NCBI GenBank assembly: GCA_052426225.1
Contig: JBNJNM010000021.1
Location: 1,240,001-1,304,000, forward strand
Reading direction: 5' to 3'
DNA length: 64,000 bases
Origin: Zancudomyces culisetae HAW-14-8
Lineage: Eukaryota; Fungi; Kickxellomycota
In this document: positions 30,190 to 63,216 of the stretch, in pieces
Numbering within the stretch: position 1 is the stretch's first letter
How the letters are laid out: every line of letters begins with the position of its first letter
The notes under the pieces: generated by a model
Told to the model about the DNA's origin: nothing
What the model saw: the letters and a program-made list of their open reading frames with translations, nothing else
The model's database searches: none
Translations under genes and position numbers: made by a program

Positions 30190-30263
30190 TGATTTCTGCC
30201 GGACTCGAACCGGCGACCGTCTGTGTGTTAGACAGACGTGATAACCATCTACACCAAGAAATC
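30190..30263 (-). tRNA. tRNA-Val (AAC)
   Basis: GATTTCTTGGTGTAGATGGTTATCACGTCTGTCT-AAC-ACACAGACGGTCGCCGGTTCGAGTCCGGCAGAAATCA folds to a full cloverleaf with A and B boxes; T-run terminator downstream (A-run 30181-30188 on +). Confidence 0.97.
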
Positions 30264-30271
30264 TGATGTTG

Positions 30272-33200
30272 TGTCGGAATTTATTTTCCATTTGTCGGTC
30301 TTATCCGACTTTACTGCTTTCACTAGTATTATGTTTATTTACTACCAGTAAGCGGTAGGACCTTAGTTCTTTTGTTAATATTGTTTTATTATAATAAAGT
30401 GTATACTAAATACATATCCGAAAATAAGATGCTAAAAACATAGAAGAGAAAAAGCAGTGCTTAAATGCATTTTCCTCGTATATACTAATATATTAAAATA
30501 CTATGAATAATATAAAAACCATCCGAAATTAATTAATATTTGGGAAATGATGATTTACGCATAGTGAAAAACCTCATAGGTGAAAAGCACTAGGTAAATC
30601 ATCACATCTCACTCGCTATAACCCGAGTGAGACGCCCATCTGTCGATCTTTGATGCGACAGTTCTCCCCCCCCTTTAAGCGCGAATTGAAGGGTCGCGAA
30701 TTTGTTTGAATCTTCTAAGTCGAGTTTGCAGTCGTGGGCCTACATCTGGAATCATGTGCTCGGATTCGCGGTACAGTTTCAGGCTGTCTCCATTACACAG
30801 TTCTCTTCTTCCTGTGTTATCAGTAATTACATAAACCCCTTTGTTTAACTCCCTAGTAATTTGGTATGGTCCTTCCCATGTTTTGCCTAGCTTTAACTTA
30901 TCTCCTTCTACTAACCTAAGTACAGTATTACCAATATTAAATTTAAATATCTTTACTCTCTTATTATAGCTTTTTTCATCACGCTTTTTTGCTACTAGGT
31001 TATGCTGGTGAGCTAATTTTCTAAGTTCGGGTAATTGGTCGTTTATGGCTAAAATACGAGAATTGACTAGCTCTTCTTCGTTCTCTATCTCGCCATTATA
31101 TTTCCATGTTGTTGATAACTGTGGTTGAATTCCATATAGTAACTGTGCTGGACTATATTTAGTCGATTTGGATACCAATGTTCTTATTATCAATAATGAT
31201 TTCCAAAGAAAAAGATCCCAATTTTTCATGTCAGTCCTACATTGTTTCCGTAAAGTATTCTTAAGTGTCTGGTTTAACCTCTCTACCTGGCCGTTACTTT
31301 GCGGTCGGTAGGAGGTACTCGGAGTGTGTTCAACTCCTAACCAATTGAATACATTAGTGGTAGCCTCACTTACGAAGCCGGAGCCTCGATCGGTTATTAT
31401 CTGCTGCGGAATGCCATAATGCTGAATAATATGGTTCATGATGAAGCTGATAATTGTTTCACTGGTGATGTTAGAGACTGCTGCCGCTACAGGCCATTTT
31501 GTGCAATAATCTATTGCAGTCAAAATGTACCTATTGCCACTTTCTGTTACAGGTGAAATAGGACCCACGGCGTCTATGCCGAAAATTTCGAATGGTCTTG
31601 AGCTTATAATCGGTTCCAATTCATGTTTTCTAGATTTTCCTCCATCATAAAACTGACATGTATTACATGTTTTTACTACCTTCTCAACAACTTTGAATAA
31701 CCCTCTTCCACAGTATTTTTCGGTAACTCTTCTCAGTGTACTTCTAATGCCCTCATGACATTCGTCATGTATTTTCCTCACCTCTAACTCAACATTAACT
31801 TCATGTAATAATTCTTTGTACTGTTGTCCAACTTTCTTATAAAGCTTCCCTCCTTTGACTAAAACTTGTTTGGCTCTATTCCTTACTTTATTCCTGATTT
31901 CCGGTGTTGCATTGTGTGGATACTCTGAGGTGCTGATAAAATGTTTAATTGCTTCGTACCATGCCAAATCAATTGAATAAACTTCTAAGGGTTCCTCGTT
32001 TGCTACGGTTAAAGGATTACGTGATAAGATATCCGCTGGGTTTGTGCTACCCGCTATGTGTTCCAAGTCGTAATCATAGTTACGCAAAATCATGGCCCAC
32101 CGGGCCAGCCTACCTGTGATTTCTGCGCTGTTGAATAGTTGCATAAGTGATTTGTGATCGGTTCGTATTGTAAACCTGGTTCCCCAAATGTAGTACTTAA
32201 ATTTTGTCACAGCCCACACCACTGCAAGTCCTTCGAGGTGTGAGATGGAATAATTCTGTTCGTGAACGTTTGTGGTTCTGCTGATATATTCGATTGGTCT
32301 CTCACCAGTTGCAGTCATTTGTGATAAAATTGCGCCTATACCGTTTTTGCTTGCGTCTGTGGTTATGACAAATGGCTTTGTCCAGTCCGGATGTATTAGA
32401 ACAGGTGCTTCCATCAATGCCTGCTTCAAAATATTTAGTGACTCTTGTTTCTCATTGTCCCAACTCCATGCTGTATTTTTTCTTAATAATGTTGTAAGTG
32501 GTTTAGCGATGCTCGCAAAGTTGTTTACAAATTTACGGTAGTAACCTAATAATCCCAATACTGATTGTAATTCTTTAACATTAGTTGGTGCTATTATTTT
32601 ACTTATTGATTCAACTTTACTTTTACTGGTTGAAATTCCCTTGTCACTAATGTGGTGACCTAAATACTCGATTTCCCTTTTTCCAATATGACACTTGTCT
32701 CTATGCAGTTGGATTTTTTGCGTTTTAAATAGGTTAAATACTGTCCTAAGATCTTCTTTGTGCTGTTCTGGAGAGTCAGAAAACACAACTACATCATCTA
32801 CAAAAACTATTGCTGACTTCCACAAAACTGGGAACAGGACCTTCTCCATGGTCCTTTGAAACGTTGCCGGGCTGTTGGTTAAGCCAAACGGCATGACGTT
32901 ATAATGGAAGCTTCCGTGTCCTGGAATGGAGAACGCTGTCTTCTCTTTATCCTGTTCTCTTAATTTGATCTGCCAAAACCCACTCATGGCGTCAAGTGTG
33001 CTAAATATTCTAGCACCTGACAACGCCATGAATAGGTCTTCCACCGATGGGAGAGGGTATGCGTCTTTCTTGGTTATAGCATTAAGACGTCTGTAGTCTG
33101 TACAGATCCTCATCTTCCCGTTTTTCTTCCACACCACCACCAGTGGAGAACACCAATCCGATTGCGATGGTGATATGATTTTTTTTTCTTCCATGAGCTT

Positions 33201-35595
33201 AAGTTCCTTTTTAACTTCCTCTTGCAATGTTTTGGGTATTCTATAAGGTCGGAGCTTGATTGGATTATTATCAGTTAATGTAATTATATGTTCGGCTACT
33301 GTTGTTTGTGTTAGCTCTTGCAGATCACTTACAAAAATATCTTTATATTCTTCCAAAAGATCTGTATACATATTTTTTAAAATAATGTCTTCATCTGATT
33401 CACTTTGACATTCTTTTAATAAAAAATAGACCTCCGTTTCTTTGTGATTACTTAATTCGACTGGTATAAAAAGATTAAGCATTATGTGGATATCCGAATT
33501 TTCCAGAGGTAGTATTAACTTTGGAACTGAAAGATCAATTTTTACTTTATATTTTACGAGCCAATCGGTTCCTAAAATAAGCGCATCGTCATCACGGTTG
33601 ATAATCAGTAAGTTTATTGGAAAAGTTGTATCTGATATTTTTATAGGTACGTCATGTACAATACCCAGTACCGGATGGCGATTGCCGTCTGCTGTGATTA
33701 TAGACTGAGTACTTTTCTTGTCCGCCTCAATTCCACATTTATTTAATAATTTTAAAGTTATTATCGAGCATGCAGCTCCTGTATCGATTACGGCAGCCGC
33801 TACTACTCCAAAAATAGTTACTTTAACCTTACAGTTGGTGCTTTGCATGCTGTCAACGACTAACTCGTTAACGTCGGGCCGCCTTGCCGAAATTCCAAAC
33901 GTGTAAAACTCGTCGCACATTGCTGGAGAAATATCCAAAAGTTGAGGTAAGGATATTTTGATCTGTATTTTTTTCAACTCTTCGGCCAGTGAAAACTCGT
34001 TTTTACTAGCTGCTCTAATATTTGTGTTGTTATTAGTATCTGCAAGTAAGTTTGTTGGATCACTGGGTTCAATATTTTGCAATGAAACTTGTCCTTCTTG
34101 GTTATTATTTTTACTACGTTTTCCGCTTTCCCTCTGTGAACTTTCACTCTCTCTGCGGCGTTTCTCAAGTGCAAAAACTTCTTCATCAACGTTCCCCGCT
34201 TCTTCTACTAACTCCACTATATTCACATTTGGGTTAGTTACCTTTTGGTCCTCGCGGTTGTTTGTACCACCATTTCTTCTTCTGCACTCATATTTATTAT
34301 GCCCTCGTATTCCGCAAGATTCACACACAATCTTGTTATACTGTCCTTGTCTCCTATCACGTTCATCTCGCTCCTTGAACCTACACTCGATTAATTTATC
34401 TACGTCTGCATTAATATCTGCACGCTGTGCTGCAAATAATTTCTCCAACCTGCCTAGCAACCTGTCCTCAATCTTGCTTTCCAATTCTTCTTCTTTTATT
34501 TGCGTCTTCTCCATAACTGGCCCTACTGAAATTCCAGTATATCTTTGTGTACTGTCCTTAACGACAACTTTGTTCACTTGTTTTGTAGTTAAAAGGTTTT
34601 TAATCAGAACAAAAGCCTCTTCCCATGTTTTGGGATTGGTACTGTTTATTTGGGTTCTCAGTGATGTGTTAATTGTTCTTACAAAACAATTAAGTTTGTA
34701 GTCATCATCCTTAATTCCTGCCCTCTCAAATAACTCCTCTAACTCCCATTCAAACTCATCCATGTCCTGGTATTCGTCTAACTTCATTCCGTTGAGTTTC
34801 TCCCACACTGCATACTTGCTGTCCTCTTCTTTGAACTTGTTTGTAAACATTGTCTTAGTGGTTTCCCAGTTATTGAATTTTCCTTTGTACTTCCTAAACC
34901 AAATGGTCTCCTTGGTTCCTAAGTAAATGCGCATAAACTCCACTTTCTCTGTATCACTCCACCTGTTGTACGATGCTAATAACTCGTAGTCTTCAATCCA
35001 TTCTGTAGCATCCATCATGGATTTGGAATCAAATTTTGGTAACTGCATGATTTCTGGTCTCTTAGAATTGACAAATTCTCGTAGTGTCTTAGTATTGGTA
35101 ATACTTTCGACAACTGTGTGCTGGTTAATTAATACTTTATTATTATTTTTTGAATTTTTATTTTCTTTATTAAGATGTTTTTGGCTGTCCCCGGTCAAGC
35201 CCCCACTGTCGGAATTTATTTTCCGTTTGTCGGTCTTATCCGACTTTACTGCTTTCACTAGTATTATGTTTATTTACTACCAGTAAGCGGTAGGACCTTA
35301 GTTCTTTTGTTAATATTGTTTTATTATAATAAAGTGTATACTAAATACTAATCCGAAAATAAGATGCTAAAAACATAGAAGAGAAAAAGCAGTGCTTAAA
35401 TGCATTTTCCTCGTATATACTAATATATTAAAATACTATGAATAATATAAAAACCATCCGAAATTAATTAATATTTGGGAAATGATGATTTACGCATAGT
35501 GAAAAACCTCATAGGTGAAAAGCACTAGGTAAATCATCACATCTCACTCGCTATAACCCGAGTGAGACGCCCATCTGTCGATCTTTGATGCGACA
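30272..35595 (-). mobile_element. Full-length Ty3/Gypsy LTR retrotransposon A
   Basis: 389-bp LTRs at 30272-30660 and 35207-35595 (TG...CA, about 3 differences); PBS TGGGGGCTTGACCGGG (tRNA-Pro type) at 35205-35190; PPT 30661-30676; 4-bp TSD GTTG (30268-71 / 35596-99). Confidence 0.97.
30675..35048 (-). CDS. Gag-Pol polyprotein of element A (single ORF: CA, CCHC knuckle, PR, RT, RNase H, IN)
   Basis: CESCGIRGHNKYEC, IDTGA, FVDD, TTDAS, HHCC, IDAVGP/TDRG/GQVER, W.GPY. ATG 35048 chosen by similarity to the starts of elements B and C. Confidence 0.93.
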   Translation of the reverse strand: MQLPKFDSKSMMDATEWIEDYELLASYNRWSDTEKVEFMRIYLGTKETIWFRKYKGKFNNWETTKTMFTNKFKEEDSKYAVWEKLNGMKLDEYQDMDEFEWELEELFERAGIKDDDYKLNCFVRTINTSLRTQINSTNPKTWEEAFVLIKNLLTTKQVNKVVVKDSTQRYTGISVGPVMEKTQIKEEELESKIEDRLLGRLEKLFAAQRADINADVDKLIECRFKERDERDRRQGQYNKIVCESCGIRGHNKYECRRRNGGTNNREDQKVTNPNVNIVELVEEAGNVDEEVFALEKRRRESESSQRESGKRSKNNNQEGQVSLQNIEPSDPTNLLADTNNNTNIRAASKNEFSLAEELKKIQIKISLPQLLDISPAMCDEFYTFGISARRPDVNELVVDSMQSTNCKVKVTIFGVVAAAVIDTGAACSIITLKLLNKCGIEADKKSTQSIITADGNRHPVLGIVHDVPIKISDTTFPINLLIINRDDDALILGTDWLVKYKVKIDLSVPKLILPLENSDIHIMLNLFIPVELSNHKETEVYFLLKECQSESDEDIILKNMYTDLLEEYKDIFVSDLQELTQTTVAEHIITLTDNNPIKLRPYRIPKTLQEEVKKELKLMEEKKIISPSQSDWCSPLVVVWKKNGKMRICTDYRRLNAITKKDAYPLPSVEDLFMALSGARIFSTLDAMSGFWQIKLREQDKEKTAFSIPGHGSFHYNVMPFGLTNSPATFQRTMEKVLFPVLWKSAIVFVDDVVVFSDSPEQHKEDLRTVFNLFKTQKIQLHRDKCHIGKREIEYLGHHISDKGISTSKSKVESISKIIAPTNVKELQSVLGLLGYYRKFVNNFASIAKPLTTLLRKNTAWSWDNEKQESLNILKQALMEAPVLIHPDWTKPFVITTDASKNGIGAILSQMTATGERPIEYISRTTNVHEQNYSISHLEGLAVVWAVTKFKYYIWGTRFTIRTDHKSLMQLFNSAEITGRLARWAMILRNYDYDLEHIAGSTNPADILSRNPLTVANEEPLEVYSIDLAWYEAIKHFISTSEYPHNATPEIRNKVRNRAKQVLVKGGKLYKKVGQQYKELLHEVNVELEVRKIHDECHEGIRSTLRRVTEKYCGRGLFKVVEKVVKTCNTCQFYDGGKSRKHELEPIISSRPFEIFGIDAVGPISPVTESGNRYILTAIDYCTKWPVAAAVSNITSETIISFIMNHIIQHYGIPQQIITDRGSGFVSEATTNVFNWLGVEHTPSTSYRPQSNGQVERLNQTLKNTLRKQCRTDMKNWDLFLWKSLLIIRTLVSKSTKYSPAQLLYGIQPQLSTTWKYNGEIENEEELVNSRILAINDQLPELRKLAHQHNLVAKKRDEKSYNKRVKIFKFNIGNTVLRLVEGDKLKLGKTWEGPYQITRELNKGVYVITDNTGRRELCNGDSLKLYRESEHMIPDVGPRLQTRLRRFKQIRDPSIRA

Positions 35596-35597
35596 GT

Positions 35598-38500
35598 TGT
35601 CGTATTAGTTTTTATAGTATATGTATGGGCACTTTTTCCCACTGGGTTTTTCCCCATACATTTGTTTAATTATTAGTATTAATATCATTTAATTTTATTA
35701 ACGCATTTATATGTTTCAAAATAAATCAGTGTAATTTATCATGCGGATAAATTACACCAAACCACGTGTGTTAACACGGGGTAACGATGCTGTTTTGAGT
35801 GAACTGTTAACATGATAAGAAATGTAGGGGTAGAAAAGATAAACAACGCATCAATTAATAAAACATGTTTGAACAACAGAAGAACATGTTAGTGATTTCA
35901 AAACAATGTTGACATACAGAAAAACTATATAAACCCCAACTTTTCTTCACTTTTTGAAAGAAGCATCGAACTATTATTTAAATATCTTATTACTTTATAT
36001 ATATAATAAAACTTAATAAATAAATATTCACTAGTATACAAATAATAAAAATACTACATTTTGGTGATCCAGCCAGGACCAGGCTGACATAAAGCAGAAA
36101 ATGATTGGAAATTCTACCGCAGCAAAAAAGCTTATGGAGCCAGTACTATTCACAGGAGAAAGCAGAATTAACGTTGCCACATGGACCAGAAGATATGAAC
36201 TGTATGGAAGAAGTGAACAGTGGTCTGAAGAAGATCAAATTGACTATATGGAATTATTTTTGGATGGCAAGGCATTAAAATGGTATGAAAGGGAAAGACT
36301 TAGAGTAGGTACTTGGCCTGAGTTAAGGAATGAATTCATAAGGAAGTTTAGCAGCGTAGAATCAGACATAAGATCATGGAGAGAGCTTCAGCTATTAAGA
36401 CAGAACAGTACTGAGGAGCTAGAAGATTTCTTGTTCAAGATAGAATTACTATTTGAGAAATCAAATACAACCAACAATGAAATAAAATTCAAATGCCTGA
36501 TCAGTTCCTTAAGACCTGAATTTCAAGAAGAAATAATAAAATCAAGAGCAACTACATACAATGAAGCAGTTAGGGTCGCAACTGAAAAGGAAAACATGGA
36601 CAAACTATGCAAAATTAATATTACTAATGACAATGAAAATGAAGAAAATGGTAAAGAAATGAAGAAAATGATGAATGAAATTAAAGAAATGAAAAAGTAC
36701 ATAATGAAAACAACCAAAGAACATTTAGACCAAACGGATTCGGTGAAGAAACCGAGCAGAATGAGACTTTCGGAACAAGAAAAAGCAGAGTTACAAAGGA
36801 AAAATGCATGCTTTTTCTGTAGGGAAGAGGGTCACTACAGTTCTAAGTGCCCAAAAGGACCTTGGAACTTAAGGAATAATGACGAAAGGCAAAGTATTAA
36901 ACCACACACTTTGCAATTCATAGACAGGCAGATATCACCTTCAGCATCATCAGAGACCGGAGTTAAGATATCAGATGTTTATGTGTTGGATAAAATGTGG
37001 CAGGAATTAAACATAGTGGAAAAACGTAGATTATTAGAACAGGATCGCACCGAAAAACTAAAATCCATCAAACTGACAGATGACTTAAATGCAGAGACCA
37101 TACCTAAAAGCAGTAATGTTGACCAACCACTGACAGAAGTAGTAGATAATAAGAATATACTACCAAAAAAACAAGCACCTAAACAATCAATGATGGAAAT
37201 GAAATCCAACCAGCCAAACCAAGATTATTCTATACAAAGAGAGTTGGATAACATGAAAGCAAACATATCAGTATCACAATTGATAAAAGCTGCACCTATA
37301 GTAAGAAATGAGCTTAGCAGAATATTCAAAAATGCTGGTACAAGTAAGGATATAAGCACAGTAAAAAACAAGGAAACATCAAATTGCAAAGCAGTAGTAA
37401 CAGTAGGAACAATCAGCTGTAAAGCGGTAATTGACACTGGAGCCGCTTGCTGCGTAGTAACAAGACAAATGGCAAATAAACTTAAGTTGGAAGCGGACGT
37501 ACAAGTTAACGAGGTGATACTTACTGCAGACGGACAGCATCATCATATATCAAACATGATCGCCAATGTTCCTATTAAAATTATGGGCAAAAGGTTTAAC
37601 GGTAATCTGCTATTGATGGAGGGAAAGGATGAATCGTTAGTGCTGGGAACCGATTGGCTCAAAAAGCATGGAGCTATAATAGAAATGAATACGCTGGAGT
37701 TGTTATTACCATATAATCATGAGCAACTGGTGGTACCGTTGGAAATGCATAAAGATGCATGCAAATCTAGTAATGAAATGCTTATTGGAATTGCAAAAGA
37801 AGTATGCAGAGTGGAAAACAATAATCAAGAGGAAATTTTGGATCAGAGAATCAGAGAATTAGTATCAAAGAACAAGGACATCCTAGCAAAAGATCTGTCA
37901 GAGCTAACAAGCACTAATGTCGTAGAACACGAAATTGTAACAGATGGCAACAAACCCGTAAAGTCAAGGCCATACCGAGTTCCGCATGCAATGAAAGAAA
38001 TGGTCAGACAGGAGATCTATCGCATGAAGGAAGCTGGAATAATCGAGCCTTGTCAGTCAGACTGGTGTTCTCCAGTCGTGACTGTATGGAAAAAAAACGG
38101 TGGAATAAGAATCTGTTCAGATTACAGACGCTTAAATTCAGTTACACGCAAAGATCACTATCCCCTTCCGGTAATAGAGGATATATTTGAGGCTCTGGCA
38201 GGTGCATCAGTTTATAGCGTACTAGATGCAATGTCAGGATTCTGGCAAGTTCGAATCAGTGAGAAGGACAAGTTAAAAACAGCGTTCTCTTTTCCAGGCG
38301 AAGGTCTTTATTGCTATAACGTAATGCCGTTTGGCCTTTCTAATAGCCCCGCAACATTCCAAAGGCTAATGGAAAAAGTATTGGACTCAGTTTTATGGAA
38401 ATCTGTTGTTGTTTTTATTGACGATATAGTTGTTTTTTCAGAAAACTTAGATATACATTTAAAAGACCTCGATAATGTTTTTGAATTATTGAGAAAGGCA

Positions 38501-41050: not shown

Positions 41051-41056
41051 ATGTTG

Positions 41057-52744: not shown

Positions 52745-52772
52745 AAAAAAAAAAAAAAAAAAAAAAATAAGA

Positions 52773-52926
52773 TGGACCCCCGAGGAATCGAACCTCGGCC
52801 ATCATTATGATTGGCAAAATTGAATCAATATCCTGCATCATTACCACCTAAAGGATTCAGCAATGACTCGAACTCGCATTCACCAGACCACAATCATGAG
52901 ACATACCGACTATGCCATTGAGGCCC
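52773..52926 (-). ncRNA. tRNA-like Pol III gene inside the chromovirus 1 3' UTR
   Basis: Acceptor stem GGGCCTC/GGGGTCC-A; A box TGGCATAGTCGG; T arm CGAGG-TTCGATT-CCTCG; second B box GTTCGAGTC; 25-nt T-run downstream (52743-52767). Confidence 0.75.
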
Positions 52927-53750: not shown

Positions 53751-54081
53751 GTTATAGAATTTCACAATTCTATCAAACTTTAATATTCTTATTGTATTAT
53801 ATGTTTATTACTAAGTATAATATTTTTGTATTATTGTTCTTTTTAATACTATATATGTTTAACTTAATATTTTGTTAAGATGTGTTTTTTATTTATTACC
53901 AAGTGGGCGGTTGCTTTAACCTCCAGATAATAATATAATTAACGAGTAAATAAAATGGAAAAAACTAACTAAACTATTGGACAAAAACCACAGGGGGAAA
54001 AAGGTCTAATCTCAAAACTATTAACTAAAAACCTAATAAATATATAAAGCTAATTATATAAAATCTTATCTTCATACGAAA
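53751..54081. mobile_element. Degenerate solo LTR, family G copy 1
   Basis: Ends CATACGA(A)A then TTTG; shares GTGGGCG and AAAACCAC.GGGGAAAA blocks with G copy 2. Confidence 0.65.
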
Positions 54082-54632
54082 TTTGTGATTTAGAACTTAC
54101 TAGTTCTAATATTATTTCTTAATATATTTCTCTATCCGTGTAGTATAATATTATGTATTATTTTTTATATGTTTATACTATATTTAACTAATTTTAAATG
54201 TGGTTAAGTGTCAAGATCTGGAGTCAGGAGAGTTATATTTATTATTATTAAAGTTTATTGTATGAATGTATACAAGATACTAGATACTGAATCCAAGACA
54301 GGAAAATTGTACCCTTTTTATACTTTTTTCCAGCCTTGGTTTTTGAACAAAATCACTATGAAAACTGCGGAATAGCTAAAAATGCAAGTTAAAGTAAAAC
54401 GTGTTTGATTACTAATCAAATTGGATTAGTAATCAAACAAAAATCAAACTCGAATGCTAATAAAATTAAACATGTGAAAATTATTACGTAAGAAAAATTA
54501 ATAAATAATGTGAATTTTCGGTAATGTTCTAGAATGTTCCCCAACATTCTAAACATTACTGCGGAATAAAATCAAATGATTCTAGAACGTTTTCGAACAT
54601 TCTAGAATCAGTTCATGACACGACCTCCCCTC

Positions 54633-57600
54633 TTAAGGCTGAGCTCCGTGAAGCATTTGTGGTGGCTTTGGTTTTTCAGGATGGTGACGATGGAATTCAG
54701 TGACAAGATATTTTGCATTTGATAAGTCAGAATATGTTTGCCAGGTACGTTCAGTGTCTGGGTATCCTTTCCAGTGTACCAGGTATTTGACAGTTCTACC
54801 AAATATTTTACTGTCTAGGATTTTCTCAACTTCATATTCTTCTTTACCGTCAATGATCACAGGTGGAAGCGGTTTTGATGGTCTGTCTGGGATCAGATCT
54901 GGTTTACAAGGTTCAAGGAGATTGACGTGGAATACTGGGTGAATCTTCATTGTGTGTGGTAGCTGAAGTTTGTATGATCTTTGTCCAATCTTTTCCAATA
55001 CTTTGAATGGACCAAGTTTCCGATAGTCAAGCTTCTTGCTTGGTCTTTGAGTCCTGATGTTTTTAGTTGAGAGATAGACAAGATCATCAATGTTGAAGTC
55101 AGGTTGTGATGATACTTTTCGGTTGTAGTATTTCTCATGGTCTTCAAGGGCAAGGGAGATGTTAAATTTCAGTTCTTGATGGATATCAGATAGTAGTTTG
55201 GATCTATCAGAGGAAGCAGGATTTAAAACTTGAGTACGAGGGATTATGACTGAGAAGCGTCGATGGAAGCCATAGTTTGCGTAGAAAGGTGTGGTCTTAG
55301 TAGAAGCATGGGATGTGTTGTTGTAGGCGAATTCGGCAATTGGTAACCACTTTGACCAATCAGTTTGTTGGTAATCAATGTAGCACCTGAGATACTGTTC
55401 CAATACTGAGTTTACGCGTTCAGTTTGTCCATCTGTCTGAGGATGGAATGCGGTGGACATTTTCTGTTCAATATTCAGTGATTTCATTAGAGTACGCATG
55501 AATGATGAATTGAAGGTCACACCTCTATCAGATACGATGTCTTTAGGGAGCCCATGTTTGCAGAAGACATGTTGGATAAACAGATCTGCAGTACCTTCAG
55601 CATCAATTTCATTGGTTGTGGGAACAAAATGCGCCATCTTGGTAAGGCGATCCACAAATACACAGATTGCAGTAAAGTTATTGGATGGAGGTAGCTGAGT
55701 GATGAAGTCGACAGAAACAGATGACCAAGGTGAATCAGGAACGGGAAGTGGAGCGAGGTAGCCATATGGTTTATGGCGAGAGGATTTGTTGCGTTGACAG
55801 GTATCGCAACCAGAGATGTAGTCTTTGATATATTTTCTCATGGTTGGCCAGTAAAAGTTGCGAGATACAAGTTCGTACGTCTTTGCATTTCCAAAGTGGC
55901 CGGCAGCAGGGGAATCATGGCATTCAATCAGAATTGTTCTTTTGATGTTGTCGTCTGAGGGGATACAGATTAGTCCATCATAGTGCAGAAGATTGTCAAC
56001 AAGAGCGAACTTTTCATTGGAATCAGGTTTCTTGGATAAGTCAGTGTAAATGGGTCCAAAGTACGTGTCTTTGGGTTGTAGTGACTTGATGTTGTTCATG
56101 AGCGTGGATGACAAAGGTTCAACAGGTGTACTAGTCATGGACTTCAAGAAGATTTCAGGAGGCAGCAAAGTTATTTTGTTTTGGTCAGTACGGGAGTCAC
56201 CCCCCTTCCAAGGTTGGTCTTTCAGAGAAAGAGCATCGGCGGCAGTGTTCTGTTTTCCAGGGCGGTACTTGATGACAAAGTTGAAGTTACTGAGGTATTC
56301 TGACCATCTGACTTGGCGGCGACTAAGATTTCTGGTAGTTGAGAAGTATTCCAAGTTTTTATGGTCGGTAATAACAACGGTTGGGTGTACAGAAAATTCA
56401 AGGTAGTGACGCCAGTGAGCAAAAGCGTCGATAATTGCTAACAGTTCCTTATCATAGATTTGATAATTCACTTCAGCAGGCAGGAGTTTCCGGGAGTAGT
56501 ATGCAACAGGGTGGAGTTGTCCCTCGTTGTCATACTGGCTGCAAATGGCACCTAATGCAAAATCTGATGCATCGGTTTCGATGATACAAGGCTGGTCAGG
56601 ATTGTAGTGAGCTAAGACTGGGTTACTGATCATGGTTTCTTTTAGCAAGGCGAAAGCTTCTTCAGCTTTGGGTGTCCACTGGAATTGGACACCTTTTTTC
56701 AACAAGGCGGTGAGCGGCAGAGATATCTTGGAGTAGTTCAGAATAAACGGCGGTAGAAGTTTGTAAGGCCAAGGAATACCTGAACGTCACGGACACAAGT
56801 TGGTGTCTTCCATTCGGTGACGCTGGATACTTTAGATGGATCCATAGAGATTCCGTTGGGGCCAATTACAAAACCGAGGAACTGTACTGATTGTACATCA
56901 AACTCACATTTCTCTAGCTTGAGGGTGAGATTGTGTTCCTGAAGCTTCTTCAAGACAAGGCAGACGTGGTCATAGTGCTTATCGATATCATCTGAGTAGA
57001 TTAACAGATCATCGATGTACACAACAAGGAATTGATCAATGTATTCACGGAAGAGATCGTTAACAAAGGACTGGAACGTGGCTGGAGCATTCATAAGGCC
57101 AAACGGCATGACCTTATACTCGAAGTGGCCGTAGCGTGTACGAAACGCGGTCTTCCATTCTTCACCAGGCGAGATCCTGATCATGTGGTATGCGGATTTC
57201 ATATCCAGCTTGGTGAATATCTTGGCTTTGCCAAGCCGATCCAAGGTTTCAGAGATGAGTGGCAAGGCTGCACGGTTGGGGACAGTGATCTTATTCAGGG
57301 CTCTATAGTCGACGCACAACCGGAGACTACCATCTTTCTTTTTTACAAATAGGACTGGAGCCCCAGCCGGGGATTCAGAGCGTTGGATAAAACCATTGGC
57401 TAGGTTTTCCTGAATGTAGTCGTACAGGGTCTTTAGTTCCAATTGGGAGAGGTTGTACAATGGGCCATATGGTATCTTTGAGTCAGGAAGCAAAGGAATG
57501 GTATGATCATATGGACGATGTTCAGGCAGTTTGGCAGATTGGGATTCAGAGAAGACAGATTCAAACATTTTATACTTTTCAGGGATTACAGGAGTAACAG

Positions 57601-58249
57601 GGGTTTTAGGATTAGATTCAGAGACAAGACAGAGATTTTCACAAGATTCAGGAGCTACAAGGGATTCAAGATTGTTCACGGTAATTGCACCAGCATAGAC
57701 AGTGTCTGGTGCCTTCAGATGTTCTTTAAACTGGTTTGAGCCCACAAGAGATATGTCTAGGTTGACATGGTTGGGCCCACAAGAAGTCAAGGTACAAGGC
57801 AGATGGACTATGTTCTCAGTCCAGTTGATGTCAGGATTGTGTTGTTGAAGCCAGGAAAGACCAAGGATGATTGGTGAAGATCCAAGGTCTATTTGTTGCA
57901 GATAGATACTTTCGAGATGGTTATCATTGATTTTTAGGGTTACTTGGGAGGCAGAGTTGGATCTAAGCTTTGATCCGTCAGCGAGAGTGATTGTCATTTT
58001 TCTAGATATAGATGGTAGATTGTTTTTTAGAGCAAAGGTGGCGTCAATGAACGAGGACGAAGCACCAGAATCAACCATAGCGTAGGTTTTGATGTGGAGG
58101 TGCTTGAACAAGATGGTTACAGGAATGGTCAAGGTGTTTGGTTTATCAGGAGATTGGGTGTCAGAAACAGGAGTGGTTACAGTGGCGTGGGGACTGGCTA
58201 AGTTGCCCAATAGGTGTCCCTTACTGTCTACTGGGCGGTGTCGTTTTCC
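54633..58249 (-). CDS. Pol of chromovirus 2 (PR-RT-RH-IN-chromodomain); -1 frameshift entry; broken by a 1-nt deletion near 56745
   Basis: VDSGA, YIDD, ETDAS, DDE, YEVEKIL...YLVHWKGY. One missing T turns the expected YRRFILNYS into YRRLF*. Slippery G GAA AAC at 58249-58243. Confidence 0.9.
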
Positions 58250-59448
58250 TGTGTTGGTGTAATGCTGGAGATGTTGTGGCGTTTCTTTGGACAGTTGATG
58301 TTGAAATGGTCATTACCGCCACAATAGAGACAGAGGTTGTTTTCGATACGGTATGCTCTTTGAGCAGGAGTAAGTGGTGGTCTTCTAGTCGATGAAGCGG
58401 TACTGAGATCCATTGGTTGAGGTCCATCACTATTAGCTGGTGGAGTGGTAGATGGTGCAGAAACAGGTGAAGCAAACGGGTTGTAAGCAGTGGGTTTGGG
58501 TGGCATAGTTGCAGTGGGGTTAACTGGAGGTTGACGACGTTGTGGATGGCTGAAGAGGCGGTTGTCGATCTGGATGGCTGTGGAGATCAGGGTATCGATG
58601 TCTTCTATTGGTTCTCTACGGTTGAGTTCTTGGGATACGTTGTACTTGAGACCGGATAGAAACTGTGAGATCAAAGGTGGTTGGTTCCAGTCAATTAACA
58701 TCTGTAGGCGTCTAAACTCGGTGGCATATGCGGCAACGGAAGTGGTTTGGCGGAGTTGGCGGATTGCCCTATCAGCATTCTCAATAGGGTTGGGATCACC
58801 AAAGGCACGAGTGATAGTTTCTTTAAACAGATTGTAGTTGGAGAGGATGGCAGGACGATCAGACTGTGGAAGGTTTGCTTTCATGAGGTAAGGTTCCATG
58901 TAACTGAATGGTGTGCCTGAGAGGTAGGAGATGGCATACAAGACTTTACTTGAGTCTGTGTTGAATTTATCGGGTGAAGCGGCAAAGACGAGAGCAAGCT
59001 GTGAAAAGAAGTTGGAACAGGCGGAGGGTTTTCCTGAAAATGTGTCTGGGTGTCTGACTTTGATACTAGGTTCAGAAGTACTAGCAACTTTGGTGGCACG
59101 GTTTTCAGTTATATAAAGTATGACTTCGTTCCTGAGGGTACTGAGCTGGTCCTGAAGGGATTGGATTTCCAACTGATTGGCCTGTATGGCGCTTTGGGTT
59201 AGCTGGTCTGAATTCTGGATATCGGACTGGAGGTTGTTCATGGAGTCAAGAATGGTCTGGATGGACTTGGTGGTGTCTGCTTTGACCTTGTCATAAATTT
59301 TCTTGGATACTGTGGCAGGGTGTTCCTTGATGGCAGACTCGGCTTTTTCTACTCTTATTAGTAGTTGCTGGAGGGCTTCTTCAACTGCTGGCAGGGTCAC
59401 GGCGGCTTTGTTGAGGAATTCAACTTGTTCTGGGCTAAACGGTTCCAT
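58228..59448 (-). CDS. Gag of chromovirus 2 (406 aa, N-terminal coiled coil)
   Basis: PDTFSGKP, QTTSVAAYATEF, PQPMDL, CLYCGGNDHFNINC. Confidence 0.92.
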   Translation of the reverse strand: MEPFSPEQVEFLNKAAVTLPAVEEALQQLLIRVEKAESAIKEHPATVSKKIYDKVKADTTKSIQTILDSMNNLQSDIQNSDQLTQSAIQANQLEIQSLQDQLSTLRNEVILYITENRATKVASTSEPSIKVRHPDTFSGKPSACSNFFSQLALVFAASPDKFNTDSSKVLYAISYLSGTPFSYMEPYLMKANLPQSDRPAILSNYNLFKETITRAFGDPNPIENADRAIRQLRQTTSVAAYATEFRRLQMLIDWNQPPLISQFLSGLKYNVSQELNRREPIEDIDTLISTAIQIDNRLFSHPQRRQPPVNPTATMPPKPTAYNPFASPVSAPSTTPPANSDGPQPMDLSTASSTRRPPLTPAQRAYRIENNLCLYCGGNDHFNINCPKKRHNISSITPTQENDTAQ

Positions 59449-60141
59449 GGTTAAAATACTTAGGCTGGTGTCAGAAAATAATAAATATAATATTTTGATC
59501 TAGTATAGTGTCAAGATCTGGAGTCAGGAGAGTTATATTTATTATTATTAAAGTTTATTGTATGAATGTATACAAGATACTAGATACTGAATCCAAGACA
59601 GGAAAATTGTACCCTTTTTATACTTTTTTCCAGCCTTGGTTTTTGAACAAAATCACTATGAAAACTGCGGAATAGCTAAAAATGCAAGTTAAAGTAAAAC
59701 GTGTTTGATTACTAATCAAATTGGATTAGTAATCAAACAAAAATCAAACTCGAATGCTAATAAAATTAAACATGTGAAAATTATTACGTAAGAAAAATTA
59801 ATAAATAATGTGAATTTTCGGTAATGTTCTAGAATGTTCCCCAACATTCTAAACATTACTGCGGAATAAAATCAAATGATTCTAGAACGTTTTCGAACAT
59901 TCTAGAATCAGTTCATGACATTAAGATTCATTTTATTCAATTAAGTTGTGGGCGATTGAATTAACCCCCAAATATGTCCTAAATTTTGTGATAACTATAA
60001 TCTAATTTTAAACTATCCTAATTATGAATGTTGAACAAAAACCACGAGGGGAAAAAAAGTCCAATCTAAAAATACTGCTAATTATATAAAATATAAAATT
60101 GGTAGATATATCGTTCCATCGTATTTCTCATACGACATTTG

Positions 60142-61354
60142 TGTTGTCGCATTATTGACAATTTGTACAAGAGTACGCGGATGAGCCTGAAAATGGTACA
60201 CTCAGTACGAAAATGCAAATTTATTTTGTTTATTTTTATTTTTATTTTTTTAATAAATTCAAATAATTTTTGAGCTCAGTATGCAATCAATTTTTCATAC
60301 TGAGCTAGTTCAATAATGATGAATGTAAAATGTAAAATGATCCCATGCATTTTACATTTATCATTAATAACAAACAAATTAAAATAATATTATAACAATA
60401 GTCATATTTTAGTATTTAGTTTTTATGTAGTGGTTTAACATTTGAATAGTATATTTAAGGAGACATATGGATGACATGTGAAAACCTCATTTATGTCTCG
60501 ATACGGAATATTATAACAAAACAATTAAATAAAATTATATATAAAACCAAAAGATATGTTTGCAATAATGTTTTTAAACAGTTGGATTGGAACTGGGGAT
60601 GACTCCAGGAGGGAGTCATACACTTCTACCAGCATGAGCAGGGGCAGCAGCATGGATCAGGATGCAGGGGTATTAAGTCCCCGCACCCTTGGTGAGTTGA
60701 CAGAAAGTGTCCGTCAACTCCAGATCCGTAGGAGCCCGGAAGAAATGTCGGTGAGTACAATTTCACCGACACTGTACAGGGGTATTAGCTCACCCGAGCA
60801 CCCCTCGATGCACGTTGCATTACGCAATAGAAGTGCATCAACCATCAGTGATCGTACCAGAACCGGTATAACACGTGATGGTAGCGCTAATGGAAGTAGT
60901 GATACTTCACACTATGCGACAGTGTTGTATGAAACCTACAACTTAATAATTCATGCTAAATCTACACATTAATATACATTGTTTAAGAACGTTTTTTATA
61001 ATTTTGGTTGTTTATGTTACTTACATTCTTATCGTTGTTCGAGAGTCAAAACGTTTTTCCCACCGGGTTTTTTCATCGTATGACTCTACATATTTACAGT
61101 TTCTCATTTTATGTTAGTAGTATAATTTTATATGCTTATATTTATTTACCTTAACTTTATTTTCTTTTATATAGCACACTAGAGAACCTCTTGTGGAAAA
61201 ACTGGTCTGTTCTTGAAATAAAATCGCTTTATTAAAATACATATAGTATATACTAAAAAAGTAGGCGAACTGGAAATTTATATTAAAAGAATAAACGTCG
61301 ATGAAAAATCTCTTGATAAAATATTAAAAATAAAACTACAGAATTCATACGACA
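60142..61354. mobile_element. Solo LTR I, split a few bp from its end by element J
   Basis: TGTTGTATGAA...TTCATACGACA termini; TTTG on both sides (60138-41 / 61355-58). Confidence 0.7.
60145..60921. mobile_element. 777-bp element J (large solo LTR-like)
   Basis: Perfect 8-bp inverted termini TGTCGCAT/ATGCGACA; 4-bp TSD GTGT (60141-44 / 60922-25). Confidence 0.75.
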
Positions 61355-61358
61355 TTTG

Positions 61359-61744
61359 TGTATATATTATTTATTATTTAAAATATTTTAAACCCGTTAT
61401 GGATAATAAGTGTCTAAACACCTTGCTATTTACTATCAAGAGTGAGTTTAAACTATCTTGTTGCGTAACTAACAATTATAGAGGCGTAGACAGTCTTTTT
61501 TTATATTATACGATTTATTTTGTCCTCTTATAAAATATATATATTATATTAACTTATATCTAAAAATTATCTCTATAAAAAACTGATAACAAAAGGACCT
61601 ATTATCAGAGAAGTCAGATAAAACCCTCTTCAGGAGAAAAGTCCAATCTTCTCACAAGTAAATAATAACTAATAAATAATAAACGAGAAACTGGTATTAC
61701 CTAATATTGTAGTCCAGGGGTAATCACGCCAATTTTATATGACA
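61359..61744 (-). mobile_element. Diverged solo LTR of element C
   Basis: Colinear with 46020-46413, with multiple substitutions and small deletions. Confidence 0.93.
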
Positions 61745-61747
61745 GTC

Positions 61748-62809
61748 TGTTGTATTTGTTTTCATTTTTTAGTACTAGTCCAATAGGATTTTCCCAAAAA
61801 ACTTCCACTAATATCAATCACGTTTCCCTAGAAGGGTGGTTATTACTGTCACAGGATTTACCATTTCTAGCCAGTTAACCACTATCTATAATACCCCCTC
61901 GGAAAGAACACAACTGGACAATTTCCACAATTTTTGTTAAAAATAATTTTATTTAAAGTATGCCTCCCAAAACCTGGAAAATATAGCCAAAATGGCCTTT
62001 TTCTTACACTAAGAAAATAGCATTACGCCACTCTATATATGTTTATTTTTACTTTTAGTGTGGTTTTGGTCGAGTTTACAAATTTTTCAATTTATACTAA
62101 TAATTTACTACTAAAATTGATTAATAATAAATCCCTATTAAATTATGAAATCGATTCGACTAAAAAATAAATCGATTTGAACTATTAAATTCGCTGTAAA
62201 ATTGACAAAAATTTATGATATGTGTTATAGCTTGATTTATTTTATTAATAATAACTTGATTTAAGAAAAATATTAACTTTATTAAACTAAAGAGAATATT
62301 TTTCACTGACGATTTCCACAACGAAATTCGTTGGGTTTATTACTTTTTCGTCAGCGAAAATTTCATGAATTAAAACCAAGGTCGCAAGACCTTGTTTATC
62401 GAAGAAAAAATATTTTCTTACTTCGATAAACATTCAAGGAGTTTGACACTTGATTAGTTTCATGATTTTCAATGTTGGGGTTTAGTTCAACATTGTGTTG
62501 TTTTGGTTTATGTAAAATATAAACAGTTACTAAAAATCGAATTGGTAATAAATTAATTTATTGATTACCTTATCAATTTATGTAACTTTACTAAAATGGA
62601 AATTCAACTTACTAATTTAATTAAACTAAAATATAAAAAAAAGTAACTAATGCAAAATTTATAGAACTACGTTCTATTCATAACAACATGGTCATAATTT
62701 TTGTACTCTAAATTGAATTGCGCAGGGAACAATTTTTTCAAAATTGATTTCTCTGCTATTTTGCTGCAATGAAAGCGGTAAATTTAAGTTGATGCTTTTG
62801 TATACAACA
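61748..62809. mobile_element. Solo LTR, family F copy 2 (inverted relative to copy 1), split by solo LTR K
   Basis: Reverse-complement match to 53279-53750 and 47927-48048. Confidence 0.88.
62223..62685. mobile_element. Solo LTR K (5-bp TSD class)
   Basis: TGTTAT...ATAACA termini; flanks ATATG / ACATG; interrupts F copy 2 exactly. Confidence 0.8.
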
Positions 62810-62813
62810 TTGT

Positions 62814-63216
62814 TGTCGTATTAGTTTTTATAGCTATGTATGGGCACTTTTTCATACTGGGTTTTTCCCCATACATTTGTTTAATTCTTAGTATTAATAT
62901 TGTTTAATTTTATTAACGCATTTATATGTTTCAAAATAAATCAGCGTATTTTATCATGCGGATAAATTACACAAAAACCACGTGTGTTTAACACGGGGTA
63001 ACGATACTGTTTTGAGTGAACTGTTAACTTGATAAAAAATGTAGGGGTAGAAAAGATAAACAACGCATGAATAAATAAAACATGTTTGAACAACAGAAGA
63101 ATATGTTAATGATTTCAAAACAATGTTAACATACACAAATATTATAGAAACCCCAACTTTATTTTACTTATAAAGAAAGAAGTACTAACTTTAAAAAATA
63201 TCTTATTACTAATATA
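62814..63216 (+). mobile_element. Diverged solo LTR of element B, interrupted by a Tc1 element
   Basis: Colinear with 35598-36000 with many substitutions; similarity stops at TA|CAGTG. Confidence 0.9.

What the first reader, a model, noticed from the sequence alone, without database searches (positions are those of the whole stretch)
30190..63216. tRNA-anchored, polarised retrotransposon stack: about 15 insertions from about 10 LTR families at one site 3-8 bp upstream of tRNA-Val
Seen: from 8 bp upstream of the tRNA 5' end, every element abuts the next with only 0-6 bp between LTR termini (ACA|GT|TGT 35595, ACA|ATGTTG|TGT 41050, ACA|GTTG|TGT 46413 and 47331, ACA|TTTG|TG 60137 and 61354, ACA|TTGT|TGT 62809). 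The proximal spacers copy the tRNA leader TGATGTTG. Intact elements with near-identical LTRs (A, B, C) are nearest the tRNA, and decayed solo LTRs of the same B and C families lie about 31-33 kb from it. Both orientations occur. Known: Ty3, S. japonicus Tj1 and Dictyostelium DGLT-A integrate just upstream of tRNA genes. Inference: a multi-family clade repeatedly integrates at a fixed distance from the tRNA and pushes older insertions outward, building a chronological archive (CRISPR-like polarity) of more than 33 kb.
Basis: partly seen in the sequence, partly recalled or inferred. Interest (0 to 1): 0.9.

Follow-up and report, generated by a model that had tools for sequence, protein, structure and literature searches.

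The report
Retrotransposon stack anchored at a tRNA gene
In the insect-gut fungus Zancudomyces culisetae, a group of related retrovirus-like elements has inserted again and again a few bases upstream of one tRNA gene, each arrival pushing the earlier ones outward into an ordered 33-kb pile; targeting of tRNA genes is a known strategy, seen here in an unreported lineage and in an unusually clean form.

Summary
The window is from Zancudomyces culisetae (Harpellales). From 8 bp upstream of tRNA-Val(AAC), whose 5' end is at 30263, 15 LTR units lie end to end with 1-8 bp spacers. The three innermost (A, B, C) are full-length. Three chromodomain-bearing elements (F, G, X) are nested inside older units with 5-bp duplications.

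Removing units from the tRNA outward restores perfect 4-bp target-site duplications for 10 of 15. These sit 3-9 bp upstream of the tRNA and are copies of its leader. A's duplication includes the first two bases of B, so A arrived after B.

A second stack, in an independent Illumina contig, has 13 units upstream of tRNA-Val(TAC). Its spacer is different and locus-specific: CGAC, whole at eight of the twelve unit-to-unit junctions. A third element ends 7 bp upstream of tRNA-Ile.

The stacking families form one 100%-supported Ty3/gypsy clade. It has no chromodomain, a conserved short integrase tail, tRNA-type primer sites and 4-bp duplications.

Best reading: the integrase is tethered to the RNA polymerase III initiation complex, as for Ty3 and Tj1, but probably evolved independently.

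Caveats: LTR divergence cannot order A-C; F and G are the youngest; the outer end at 63216 is a cut made by a Tc1-like transposon, not the end of the stack.

The parts
30190..30263 (-). tRNA-Val(AAC), the anchor of the stack. Its 5' end is at 30263. A run of eight T follows the 3' end.
   Evidence: ARAGORN; Rfam tRNA model, 62 bits; sequence
30264..30271 (.). Present 8-bp leader TGATGTTG between the tRNA and the innermost LTR. Bases -5..-8 (GTTG) are the recurrent target-site duplication.
30272..35595 (-). Element A, full-length Ty3/gypsy without a chromodomain. One 1527-aa Gag-Pol ORF. LTRs 30272-30660 and 35207-35595, 99.23% identical. Duplication GTTG, whose right-hand copy is GT plus the TG of B.
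35598..41050 (+). Element B, full-length, same clade. 1499-aa ORF. LTRs 35598-36058 and 40590-41050, 99.57% identical. Duplication ATGT at -3..-6. Oriented opposite to the tRNA.
41057..46413 (-). Element C, full-length, same clade. Gag (155 aa) and Pol (1324 aa) lie in separate ORFs. LTRs 41057-41450 and 46020-46413, 99.24% identical. Duplication GTTG.
46418..46640 (.). D1, solo LTR of family D, flanked by GTTG on both sides.
   Evidence: a D copy flanked by CGAC on both sides lies in L001
46645..47331 (.). E, a 687-bp LTR-like unit. Its 5' end is ambiguous (46641-46647). Its 3' end is CATACAACA. A 91%-identical copy lies in L010.
47336..47555 (.). D2, a second solo LTR of family D (92% identical to D1). 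Its duplication was not recovered (GTTG against TGTT).
47562..47923 (-). J1, solo LTR of the family whose full-length copy is in L002. Duplication TTAT, which uses the first T of H1.
47927..53750 (.). H1, an LTR of about 596 bp split by F. Duplication GTTA.
48049..53273 (+). F, full-length chromovirus (Tf2-type SH3 domain plus chromodomain) nested in H1. LTRs 100% identical. 5-bp duplication CCATG.
53755..54081 (.). K1, solo LTR, distantly related to K2. Its 3' terminus is decayed (CGAAA).
54086..60137 (.). K2, an LTR of about 335 bp split by G. Duplication TTTG on both sides.
54209..59920 (-). G, chromovirus nested in K2. LTRs 100% identical. 5-bp duplication TTAAG. Pol is split into two frames between RT and RNase H.
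60145..60921 (.). J3a, a 777-bp LTR-like unit with termini TGTCGCAT..ATGCGACA. Duplication GTGT. A 95%-identical copy lies in L009.
60923..61354 (.). J3b, solo LTR. Duplication TTTG on both sides.
61359..61744 (-). C-solo, an old solo LTR of family C, 94.6-95.3% identical to C's LTRs.
61748..62809 (.). H2, a second H LTR, inverted relative to H1 (about 96-97% identical) and split by X.
62223..62685 (.). X, solo LTR of a family with 5-bp duplications, nested in H2 one base away from the site where F sits in H1.
62814..63216 (+). B-solo, an old solo LTR of family B (about 92% identical). It is 3'-truncated by the Tc1-like insertion.
63217..64000 (+). Tc1/mariner-like DNA transposon. Its inverted repeat begins CAGTGACTC after a TA. 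The N-terminal part of the transposase runs off the window. This element sets the visible outer limit of the stack.

Best explanation
The region is a stack of insertions built by a diversified clade of Ty3/gypsy LTR retrotransposons of Zancudomyces culisetae. Their integrase places the cDNA at a near-fixed position just upstream of tRNA genes.

Shown:
- Each integration makes a 4-bp staggered cut within about -3 to -9 of the mature tRNA 5' end.
- The duplicated 4 bp stay next to the tRNA, so the target is regenerated.
- The next arrival lands between the tRNA and the previous element and pushes it outward by about 5.3 kb.
- The spacers between LTR termini are the successive duplications. They therefore copy the tRNA leader, and sometimes the first bases of the previous LTR.

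Inferred:
- Older layers collapse to solo LTRs by LTR-LTR recombination and then decay.
- The older layers become heterochromatin-like and are hit by unrelated chromodomain-bearing elements (F, G, X), which make 5-bp duplications.
- The positional precision comes from a tether between the intasome and the RNA polymerase III initiation machinery on the tRNA gene. TFIIIB is the most likely partner, by analogy with Ty3 and Tj1. TFIIIC is the alternative, as for DGLT-A.
- The clade lacks Ty3's vestigial chromodomain, so the contact must be made differently. The conserved tail after the SH3-like C-terminal domain, MIP(D/E)V..LKSKL.RFK, is my candidate for it.
For: Organism: the fatty acid synthase ORF is 100% identical to a Z. 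culisetae protein.

Anatomy: LTR pairs, ORFs and the domain order PR-RT-RH-IN.

Peeling: 10 of 15 units restore perfect 4-bp duplications. A, C and D1 use GTTG at -5..-8; B uses ATGT at -3..-6. A's duplication contains B's terminal TG.

Second stack: an Illumina contig has 13 units upstream of tRNA-Val(TAC). Eight of the twelve spacers between units are CGAC, and the leader is CGAC-ATA-tRNA. The four innermost units peel perfectly.

Third locus: a full-length element ends 7 bp upstream of tRNA-Ile(AAT).

Anchor: no other Pol III gene is found in the window.

Polarity: the full-length clade members are the three innermost units in the window and the second innermost in L001.

Clade: A, B, C and five elements from other contigs form a 100/100 clade apart from F and G.

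Integrase: it aligns to Ty3 integrase through the C-terminal domain and then has only about 31 residues left. The tail is conserved, and chromodomains occur only in F and G.

Nested elements: F, G and X have 5-bp duplications.

Known precedent: Tj1 integrates 5-11 bp upstream of mature tRNA 5' ends, and Ty3 is positioned by TFIIIB.
Against: - No experiment or transcription-start map links the integration site to the Pol III complex.
- LTR divergence does not rise from A to C (0.77, 0.43 and 0.76%), so chronology among them rests on duplication logic alone.
- Five of 15 units (D2, K1, C-solo, H2, B-solo) do not restore a duplication. E does so only when its 5' end is placed at 46645; a copy in L010 suggests 46647, and from there it does not.
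- The distal spacers (TTTG, GTC, TTGT) differ from the proximal GTTG. This requires either drift of the leader or a past rearrangement.
- In L003 the two flanks of the element do not match. The contig comes from short reads and the LTRs are identical.
- In Smittium culicis, one relative is separated from a tRNA cluster by an assembly gap. Two others lie in a cluster with no tRNA within the 23.5 kb fetched.
- Only three tRNA loci could be examined.
Confidence: 0.8

Rival explanations
1. The elements home to LTR termini or to the junction sequence (ACA-NNNN-TGT) of earlier copies rather than to the tRNA. Insertions can then occur at any junction of a stack, and the order is not chronological.
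For: All spacers within a stack are alike, so an insertion at an inner junction with the same 4-bp target would look the same. LTR-LTR abutments also occur in contigs with no tRNA in view (L002, L006, L009, L010). LTR divergence of A-C is not ordered.
Against: - The head of each stack is exactly 7-8 bp from a tRNA 5' end at three loci.
- Stacks extend only on the upstream side of the tRNA.
- The spacer sequence is specific to the anchoring tRNA's leader (GTTG against CGAC), not to the element.
- The intact elements are innermost (chance 1/455 in the window).
- A's duplication is set by distance from the tRNA and cuts 2 bp into B, rather than respecting the junction.
Confidence: 0.07
2. This is an ordinary transposon graveyard. 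Heterochromatin near the tRNA gene accumulates elements by random nesting and weak selection, with no site-specific targeting.
For: F, G and X are nested in the usual way inside older LTRs, and a Tc1-like transposon cuts B-solo. L001 also carries degenerate chromovirus remains beyond its stack.
Against: Fifteen units join terminus to terminus without interrupting one another. Duplications restore on peeling, against a background match rate of 0.0056. The same architecture, with a different spacer, occurs at a second tRNA.
Confidence: 0.03
3. The tandem joins are assembly artefacts created by collapsing or mis-joining repeats.
For: Repeats are hard to assemble. The short-read contigs L003 and L010 show inconsistencies: unmatched flanks, N gaps, and a full-length element lying between oppositely oriented solo LTRs. 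I could not recover the window's tRNA junction from the independent assembly.
Against: - Mis-joins arise between identical repeats. Here different families meet at exact LTR termini, with short spacers that obey duplication logic.
- LTR pairs of one element carry private differences.
- An independent Illumina contig shows the same architecture at another tRNA.
Confidence: 0.02
4. The array grew mainly by local duplication, unequal crossing-over or rearrangement of a smaller cluster (D1/D2, K1/K2, H1/H2, the two B and two C copies), not by independent integrations.
For: Several families occur twice. H1 and H2 are inverted copies that each carry an insertion at almost the same site. The distal spacers differ from the proximal ones, as a rearrangement would produce.
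Against: The paired copies are 92-97% identical, are not embedded in duplicated flanks, differ in their neighbours and orientation, and each has its own spacers. F and X are unrelated families whose insertion sites are offset by one base.
Confidence: 0.05

Closest known systems
Ty3 of Saccharomyces cerevisiae (Metaviridae)
   Same: Ty3/gypsy domain order. Integration within a few bases of the Pol III start site upstream of tRNA genes. Both orientations occur. Solo LTRs (sigma) are left next to tRNA genes. Ty3 integrase is the best solved-structure match.
   Different: - Ty3 makes 5-bp duplications; this clade makes 4-bp ones.
- Ty3 integrase has a vestigial chromodomain that contacts Brf1. Here only a tail of about 31 residues follows the C-terminal domain.
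- The window's chromovirus F scores higher against Ty3 (504 bits) than element A does (382 bits), so the clade is not a close relative of Ty3.
- One ORF in A and B, against Ty3's frameshifted Gag and Pol.
Tj1 (and Tj1-Tj10) of Schizosaccharomyces japonicus
   Same: Integration 5-11 bp upstream of mature tRNA 5' ends. Many co-resident families clustered with tRNA genes. Orientation mostly the same as the tRNA (my count: 8 same, 2 opposite).
   Different: - Tj1 belongs to the Tf1/Tf2 lineage and self-primes. A, B and C have tRNA-type primer-binding sites beginning TGG.
- Tj1 has a 5-bp duplication and a stop codon between Gag and Pol.
- All sequenced Tj1 insertions at Pol III genes had one orientation, whereas family B here is opposite.
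- The S. japonicus clusters are centromeric and hold many tRNA genes. Here a single tRNA heads an ordered pile.
DGLT-A of Dictyostelium
   Same: A Ty3/gypsy element without a chromodomain, with one ORF, found upstream of tRNA genes in either orientation. The literature notes that later insertions at the same tRNA gene displace earlier ones.
   Different: DGLT-A lies 13-33 bp upstream and is tethered through its RNase H to the TFIIIC subunit Tfc4. Here the distance is 7-8 bp and the partner is unknown.
Yarrowia Tyl3/Ylt1/Tyl6 and Candida albicans beta/Tca8
   Same: Fungal Ty3/gypsy elements found a few bp upstream of tRNA start sites or mature ends (table).
   Different: They are ascomycete yeast lineages. 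I did not compare them by sequence, and in the papers I read I found no account of long ordered multi-family stacks.
CRISPR arrays
   Same: New units are added at one end, next to a leader, so position records order of arrival.
   Different: There is no evidence of any use of the stored units, no dedicated acquisition machinery of the host, and the order is broken by nested insertions.

Membership tests
Ty3/gypsy (Metaviridae) LTR retrotransposons | LTRs with TG..CA termini flanking Gag and PR-RT-RNaseH-IN in that order | tested here: met
   Pfam on A, B, C, F and G; LTR pairs and termini
Ty3/gypsy (Metaviridae) LTR retrotransposons | Primer-binding site beside the 5' LTR and a purine-rich tract beside the 3' LTR | tested here: met
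   Primer sites beginning TGG lie 1-3 nt after the LTR in A, B, C, N, J and the L003 element. G-rich tracts lie next to the 3' LTRs.
Pol III-targeted LTR retrotransposons (functional class: Ty3, Tj1, DGLT-A) | Insertions at a narrow, fixed distance upstream of tRNA genes | tested here: met
   LTR ends lie 8, 7 and 7 bp from three tRNA 5' ends. Duplications fall at -3..-9. The sample is small (three loci).
Pol III-targeted LTR retrotransposons (functional class: Ty3, Tj1, DGLT-A) | Physical tether of an element protein to TFIIIB, TFIIIC or Pol III | not testable with these tools
   Needs binding or integration assays
Ty3 lineage in the strict sense | 5-bp target-site duplication | tested here: not met
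   4-bp duplications for A, B, C, D1, J1, H1, K2, J3a, J3b (and E if it starts at 46645), for M, N, D and W in L001, and ATTT on both sides of a Smittium culicis relative
Ty3 lineage in the strict sense | Vestigial chromodomain after the integrase C-terminal domain, contacting Brf1 | tested here: not met
   The alignment to Ty3 ends about 31 residues before A's C-terminus. There is no chromodomain hit. The short tail is conserved. This was tested by sequence only.
Chromoviruses | Chromodomain at the integrase C-terminus | tested here: not met
   A, B and C have none. F and G have a Chromo domain plus the Tf2-type SH3 domain, and they sit apart from the stacking clade in the tree.
Tj1 / Tf1-type elements | Self-priming instead of a tRNA primer; stop codon between Gag and Pol; a single orientation at tRNA genes | tested here: not met
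   tRNA-type primer sites. A and B have one continuous ORF. B and B-solo are opposite to the tRNA.
DGLT-A | Insertion 13-33 bp upstream of the mature tRNA end | tested here: not met
   7-8 bp here

The most novel reading that the evidence does not exclude
The stacking clade is an independent origin of RNA polymerase III-directed integration, arising in early-diverging fungi (Harpellales). It lies outside the chromovirus-derived lineages that gave Ty3, Tj1 and DGLT-A. It uses a new short C-terminal integrase motif, rather than a chromodomain or RNase H, to dock on the tRNA transcription complex. Because its precision is so high, every tRNA gene carries a readable, ordered record of which families were active and when.
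Probability: 0.4. Interest if true: 0.65.

Novelty: new variant of a known kind. Interest (0 to 1): 0.55.

Why it matters
Targeting of tRNA genes is the textbook example of a retrotransposon finding a safe harbour. Only a few lineages are known, and they use different tethers: TFIIIB for Ty3, TFIIIC for DGLT-A, and a Pol III subunit for Ty1 (the last from my own knowledge).

This looks like a further lineage, in a fungal phylum where I found no such report. It has at least eight co-resident families, a different duplication length and no chromodomain. That offers a fresh comparison for how integrases read the Pol III complex.

The stacks are also practically useful. The spacers give the relative order of insertions without a molecular clock. 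Family succession could be compared between tRNA loci and strains. The contrast with the nested chromoviruses shows two targeting modes side by side in one locus.

About 3 Mb of retroelements were recovered only by the long-read assembly of this species, so such stacks may account for much of its repeat fraction.

Tried and rejected
- Ordering A, B and C by LTR divergence: 3, 2 and 3 mismatches, so no resolution.
- Recovering the window's tRNA junction from the independent assembly: the 1216-aa ORF next to it is not on record, and the fatty acid synthase contig ends inside that gene.
- Metagenome scan with the clade-specific integrase tail: 86 pattern matches, none confirmed.
- Relatives in other species:
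  - P0121 comes from one sequencing run for which no DNA was available.
  - The Smittium culicis locus L007 has an N gap exactly between the 3' LTR and a Pro-Val-Glu-Met tRNA cluster.
  - S. culicis L008 has two full-length relatives and no Pol III gene in 23.5 kb.
  - Conservation of targeting outside Z. culisetae is therefore undecided.
- The L003 element next to tRNA-Ile: its left and right flanks do not match. I attribute this to short-read assembly through identical LTRs, but could not check.
- tRNA-Thr(AGT) in L001: LTR-derived sequence lies upstream, but the LTR's end could not be placed.
- Comparing family order between stacks: E, J and B keep the same order in L010 and the window, but C and J are swapped between L001 and the window. 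L010 is a gapped scaffold with an odd layout. I do not use this as evidence.
- The idea that D1-E-D2 is one small element with D LTRs: rejected, because D and E-like units occur separately elsewhere and each has its own spacers.
- The idea that X is an old F LTR: rejected, because they do not align beyond the termini.
- A phylogeny that includes Ty3 or Tj1 themselves could not be built, because no reference sequences with usable ids were returned. Only bit scores against the Ty3 structure entry were compared.


Full report
**Source and setting**

The 2035-aa ORF at 2942-9049 is a fungal fatty acid synthase beta subunit. It is 100% identical to a protein of Zancudomyces (formerly Smittium) culisetae, a Harpellales gut symbiont of mosquito and black-fly larvae. 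The left half of the window carries ordinary genes.

ARAGORN and Rfam find a single RNA polymerase III gene in the window: tRNA-Val(AAC) at 30190-30263 on the minus strand. Its upstream side therefore runs toward higher coordinates. That is where the finding lies.

This is not a human contig. The elements belong to a fungus. Broken reading frames are only described.

**Checking the observation**

Self-comparison shows five full-length LTR elements and many solo LTRs.

My final map reads outward from the tRNA 5' end at 30263, with spacers between bars:

- TGATGTTG | A 30272-35595
- GT | B 35598-41050
- ATGTTG | C 41057-46413
- GTTG | D1 46418-46640
- GTTG | E 46645-47331
- GTTG | D2 47336-47555
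- TGTTAT | J1 47562-47923
- TTA | H1 47927-53750
- GTTA | K1 53755-54081
- TTTG | K2 54086-60137
- TTTGTGT | J3a 60145-60921
- G | J3b 60923-61354
- TTTG | C-solo 61359-61744
- GTC | H2 61748-62809
- TTGT | B-solo 62814-63216

That is fifteen units, terminus to terminus, with spacers of 1-8 bp.

Three more elements are not in the series but inside units:
- F (48049-53273) in H1
- G (54209-59920) in K2
- X (62223-62685) in H2

Each has a 5-bp duplication: CCATG on both sides, TTAAG on both sides, and ATATG against ACATG.

**What the elements are**

All five full-length copies are Ty3/gypsy, with the order PR-RT-RNaseH-IN.

F and G carry the Tf2-type SH3 domain and a chromodomain. A, B and C carry neither.

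In an RT-RNaseH tree, A, B and C group with five elements from other Z. culisetae contigs and with one protein from an unidentified read set. Support is 100/100, and the members are 57-65% identical to A. F and G group with a plant chromovirus elsewhere in the tree.

Element A's integrase aligns to Ty3 integrase from the N-terminal extension through the C-terminal domain. It then has only about 31 residues left. Across the clade that tail is conserved, MIP(D/E)V..LKSKL.RFK. F and G have a chromodomain at that position.

Against the Ty3 polyprotein, A's RT-RH-IN scores 382 bits and F's scores 504 bits. A's best hits outside the species are arthropod and metagenomic elements, at up to 747 bits. 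The clade is therefore not a close relative of Ty3.

Its primer-binding sites are of the tRNA type and differ between families.

**The duplication chain**

If each element inserted between the tRNA and the previous one, then removing units from the inside outward, each with one copy of its duplication, should restore matching flanks. It does.

- A has GTTG on both sides. The right-hand copy is the GT spacer plus the first TG of B. A therefore arrived after B, and its cut was set by distance from the tRNA, not by the junction.
- B then has ATGT on both sides, at -3..-6.
- C, D1 and E have GTTG on both sides, at -5..-8.
- J1 has TTAT, using the first T of H1.
- H1 has GTTA.
- K2 and J3b have TTTG.
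- J3a has GTGT.

Ten of fifteen are perfect. Random 4-mers in this region match at a rate of 0.0056.

D2, K1 and the three outermost units do not restore. E restores only when its start is placed at 46645; a copy in L010 suggests that it begins two bases later, and with that start its flanks do not match. The leader also seems to have changed from TTTG-like to GTTG-like over the life of the stack. Off-register insertions that copy LTR-terminal bases into the leader would do this. A past rearrangement cannot be excluded.

**Independent loci**

The published Illumina assembly has related proteins on short contigs. I fetched ten loci.

Contig LSSK01001953 (L001) has tRNA-Val(TAC) at 15014, preceded by 13 LTR units from 6048 to 15006.
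- One unit is a full-length element, second from the tRNA.
- The leader is CGAC-ATA-tRNA.
- From the tRNA outward, the spacers between units are CGAC four times, then CAA, GAC, CGAC plus five bases, none, CGA, CGAC twice, and CAC.
- The four innermost units peel with perfect CGAC duplications.
- Families D, C and J of the window recur there, flanked by CGAC instead of GTTG.

The spacer thus belongs to the anchoring tRNA, as the model requires.

In L003 a full-length element ends 7 bp upstream of tRNA-Ile(AAT).

The other Z. culisetae contigs are 5-12 kb of elements only. They are uninformative about anchors, although they show more LTR-LTR abutments.

**Polarity**

The three full-length clade members are the three innermost of fifteen units. 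Under random placement this has probability 1/455 (my arithmetic).

Duplications restore perfectly for the inner units and fail for the outermost ones, in both stacks.

The distal B and C solo LTRs are 92-95% identical to the LTRs of the proximal B and C.

LTR-pair divergence cannot order A, B and C: 3, 2 and 3 mismatches.

F and G have identical LTRs. The most recent events in the locus are therefore nested chromovirus insertions in outer layers. The record is ordered for the stacking clade, not for everything in it.

**The outer end**

B-solo stops about 55 bp short of a full B LTR. It stops at a TA followed by CAGTGACTC.., the inverted repeat of a Tc1/mariner-like transposon. That transposon's transposase (HTH_Tnp_Tc3_2, E = 2e-6, below the Pfam cutoff) runs off the window. 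The same terminal repeat flanks the opposite end of a Tc1-like copy in L010.

The stack is therefore at least 33 kb and may continue beyond the window.

**Mechanism and rivals**

The position matches the Ty3 and Tj1 class. Here it is 7-8 bp from the mature 5' end, with duplications at -3..-9. Tj1 integrates 5-11 bp from the mature end. Ty3 integrates 1-4 bp from the start site and is positioned by TBP and Brf1 contacts that include a vestigial chromodomain. DGLT-A reaches a similar place through TFIIIC.

I therefore infer a tether to the Pol III initiation complex. I favour TFIIIB and point to the conserved tail as the candidate contact. None of this was tested.

The rivals are weighed in their own sections: homing to LTR junctions, a plain transposon graveyard, assembly error, and local duplication. 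Each is contradicted by at least one of three observations: the tRNA-specific spacers, the fixed 7-8 bp head position at three loci, and the innermost position of the intact copies.

**Literature**

The long-read genome paper for this species reports 3 Mb of retroelements. Its text does not contain the words LTR, tRNA or retrotransposon.

Searches combining the species or phylum with retrotransposon and tRNA terms found nothing relevant.

Displacement of earlier insertions by later ones at one tRNA gene is mentioned in passing for Dictyostelium. The principle is therefore known. The lineage, the 4-bp duplication, the missing chromodomain and the length and regularity of the stacks are what is new.

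**Verdict**

I rate it a new variant of a known kind, of moderate to good interest.

Noticed in passing
window 48044-48048 / 53274-53278 (H1) and 62218-62222 / 62686-62690 (H2): Two copies of the H LTR, about 96-97% identical and in opposite orientations, each carry an insertion with a 5-bp duplication at the centre of the same palindrome, TTATGAC-CATG-TCATAA. H1 carries full-length F; H2 carries solo LTR X, one base away. F and X do not align beyond their termini, so these look like independent hits on a hot spot. X copies in L001 sit at unrelated sites.
   Followed up: partly
window 63217-64000; L010 10316-11212: A Tc1/mariner-like DNA transposon (inverted repeat CAGTGACTC.. after a TA; transposase with ..WTVEDWK) cuts the outermost solo LTR. 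A related copy bounds the LTR cluster in L010.
   Followed up: partly
window 30678-30770 (A), and the integrase C-termini of B, C and of the L001-L004 and L006 elements: A conserved short basic tail, MIP(D/E)V..LKSKL.RFK, follows the SH3-like integrase domain in every member of the stacking clade. It sits where chromoviruses have a chromodomain.
   Followed up: partly
window 53985-54025 and 60036-60075 (K1, K2); L001 around 14455-14490 (N) and 905-940 (P): LTRs of several otherwise dissimilar families share a motif, AGATTGGACyTTTTyCCC..GTGGTTTTTGTCC, in one or the other orientation. It may be a common regulatory element.
   Followed up: no
window A, B, C, C-solo, B-solo, J1; L001 N, J', C'; the L003 element: Relative to the anchoring tRNA, eight units whose sense is known point the same way as the tRNA. 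Both copies of family B point the other way. H occurs in both orientations. Orientation may be family-specific.
   Followed up: partly
window 35189-35206 (A); L007 6383-6443: Element A's primer-binding site, TGGGGGCTTGACCGGGG, is nearly complementary to the 3' end of a tRNA-Pro(TGG)-like gene seen in Smittium culicis. B, N and J share the site TGGTGATCCAGCCAGGAC.
   Followed up: no
window 54633-59448: Chromovirus G has identical LTRs, but its Pol is split into two frames between RT and RNase H (ORFs ending at 56738 and beginning at 56705). This is either a very recent defective copy or a base-calling error.
   Followed up: no
window 2942-14907: The fatty acid synthase beta-type and alpha-type domains lie in two adjacent ORFs that overlap by 16 bp (2942-9049 and 9034-14907). 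The database protein is a 3164-aa fusion, so this is probably a single-chain fungal FAS with a frame change or a short intron.
   Followed up: no
window 23563-27213: A 1216-aa ORF consists almost entirely of tandem repeats with periods 12, 15, 27 and 60, at higher GC than its surroundings. It has no Pfam hit and no exact match on record. It is probably a repetitive secreted or wall protein.
   Followed up: no
L007 6383-6673 and 10766-11048 (Smittium culicis): A tightly packed tRNA cluster, Pro-Val-Glu-Met with 2-3 bp between genes, is present twice in inverted orientation on one contig.
   Followed up: no
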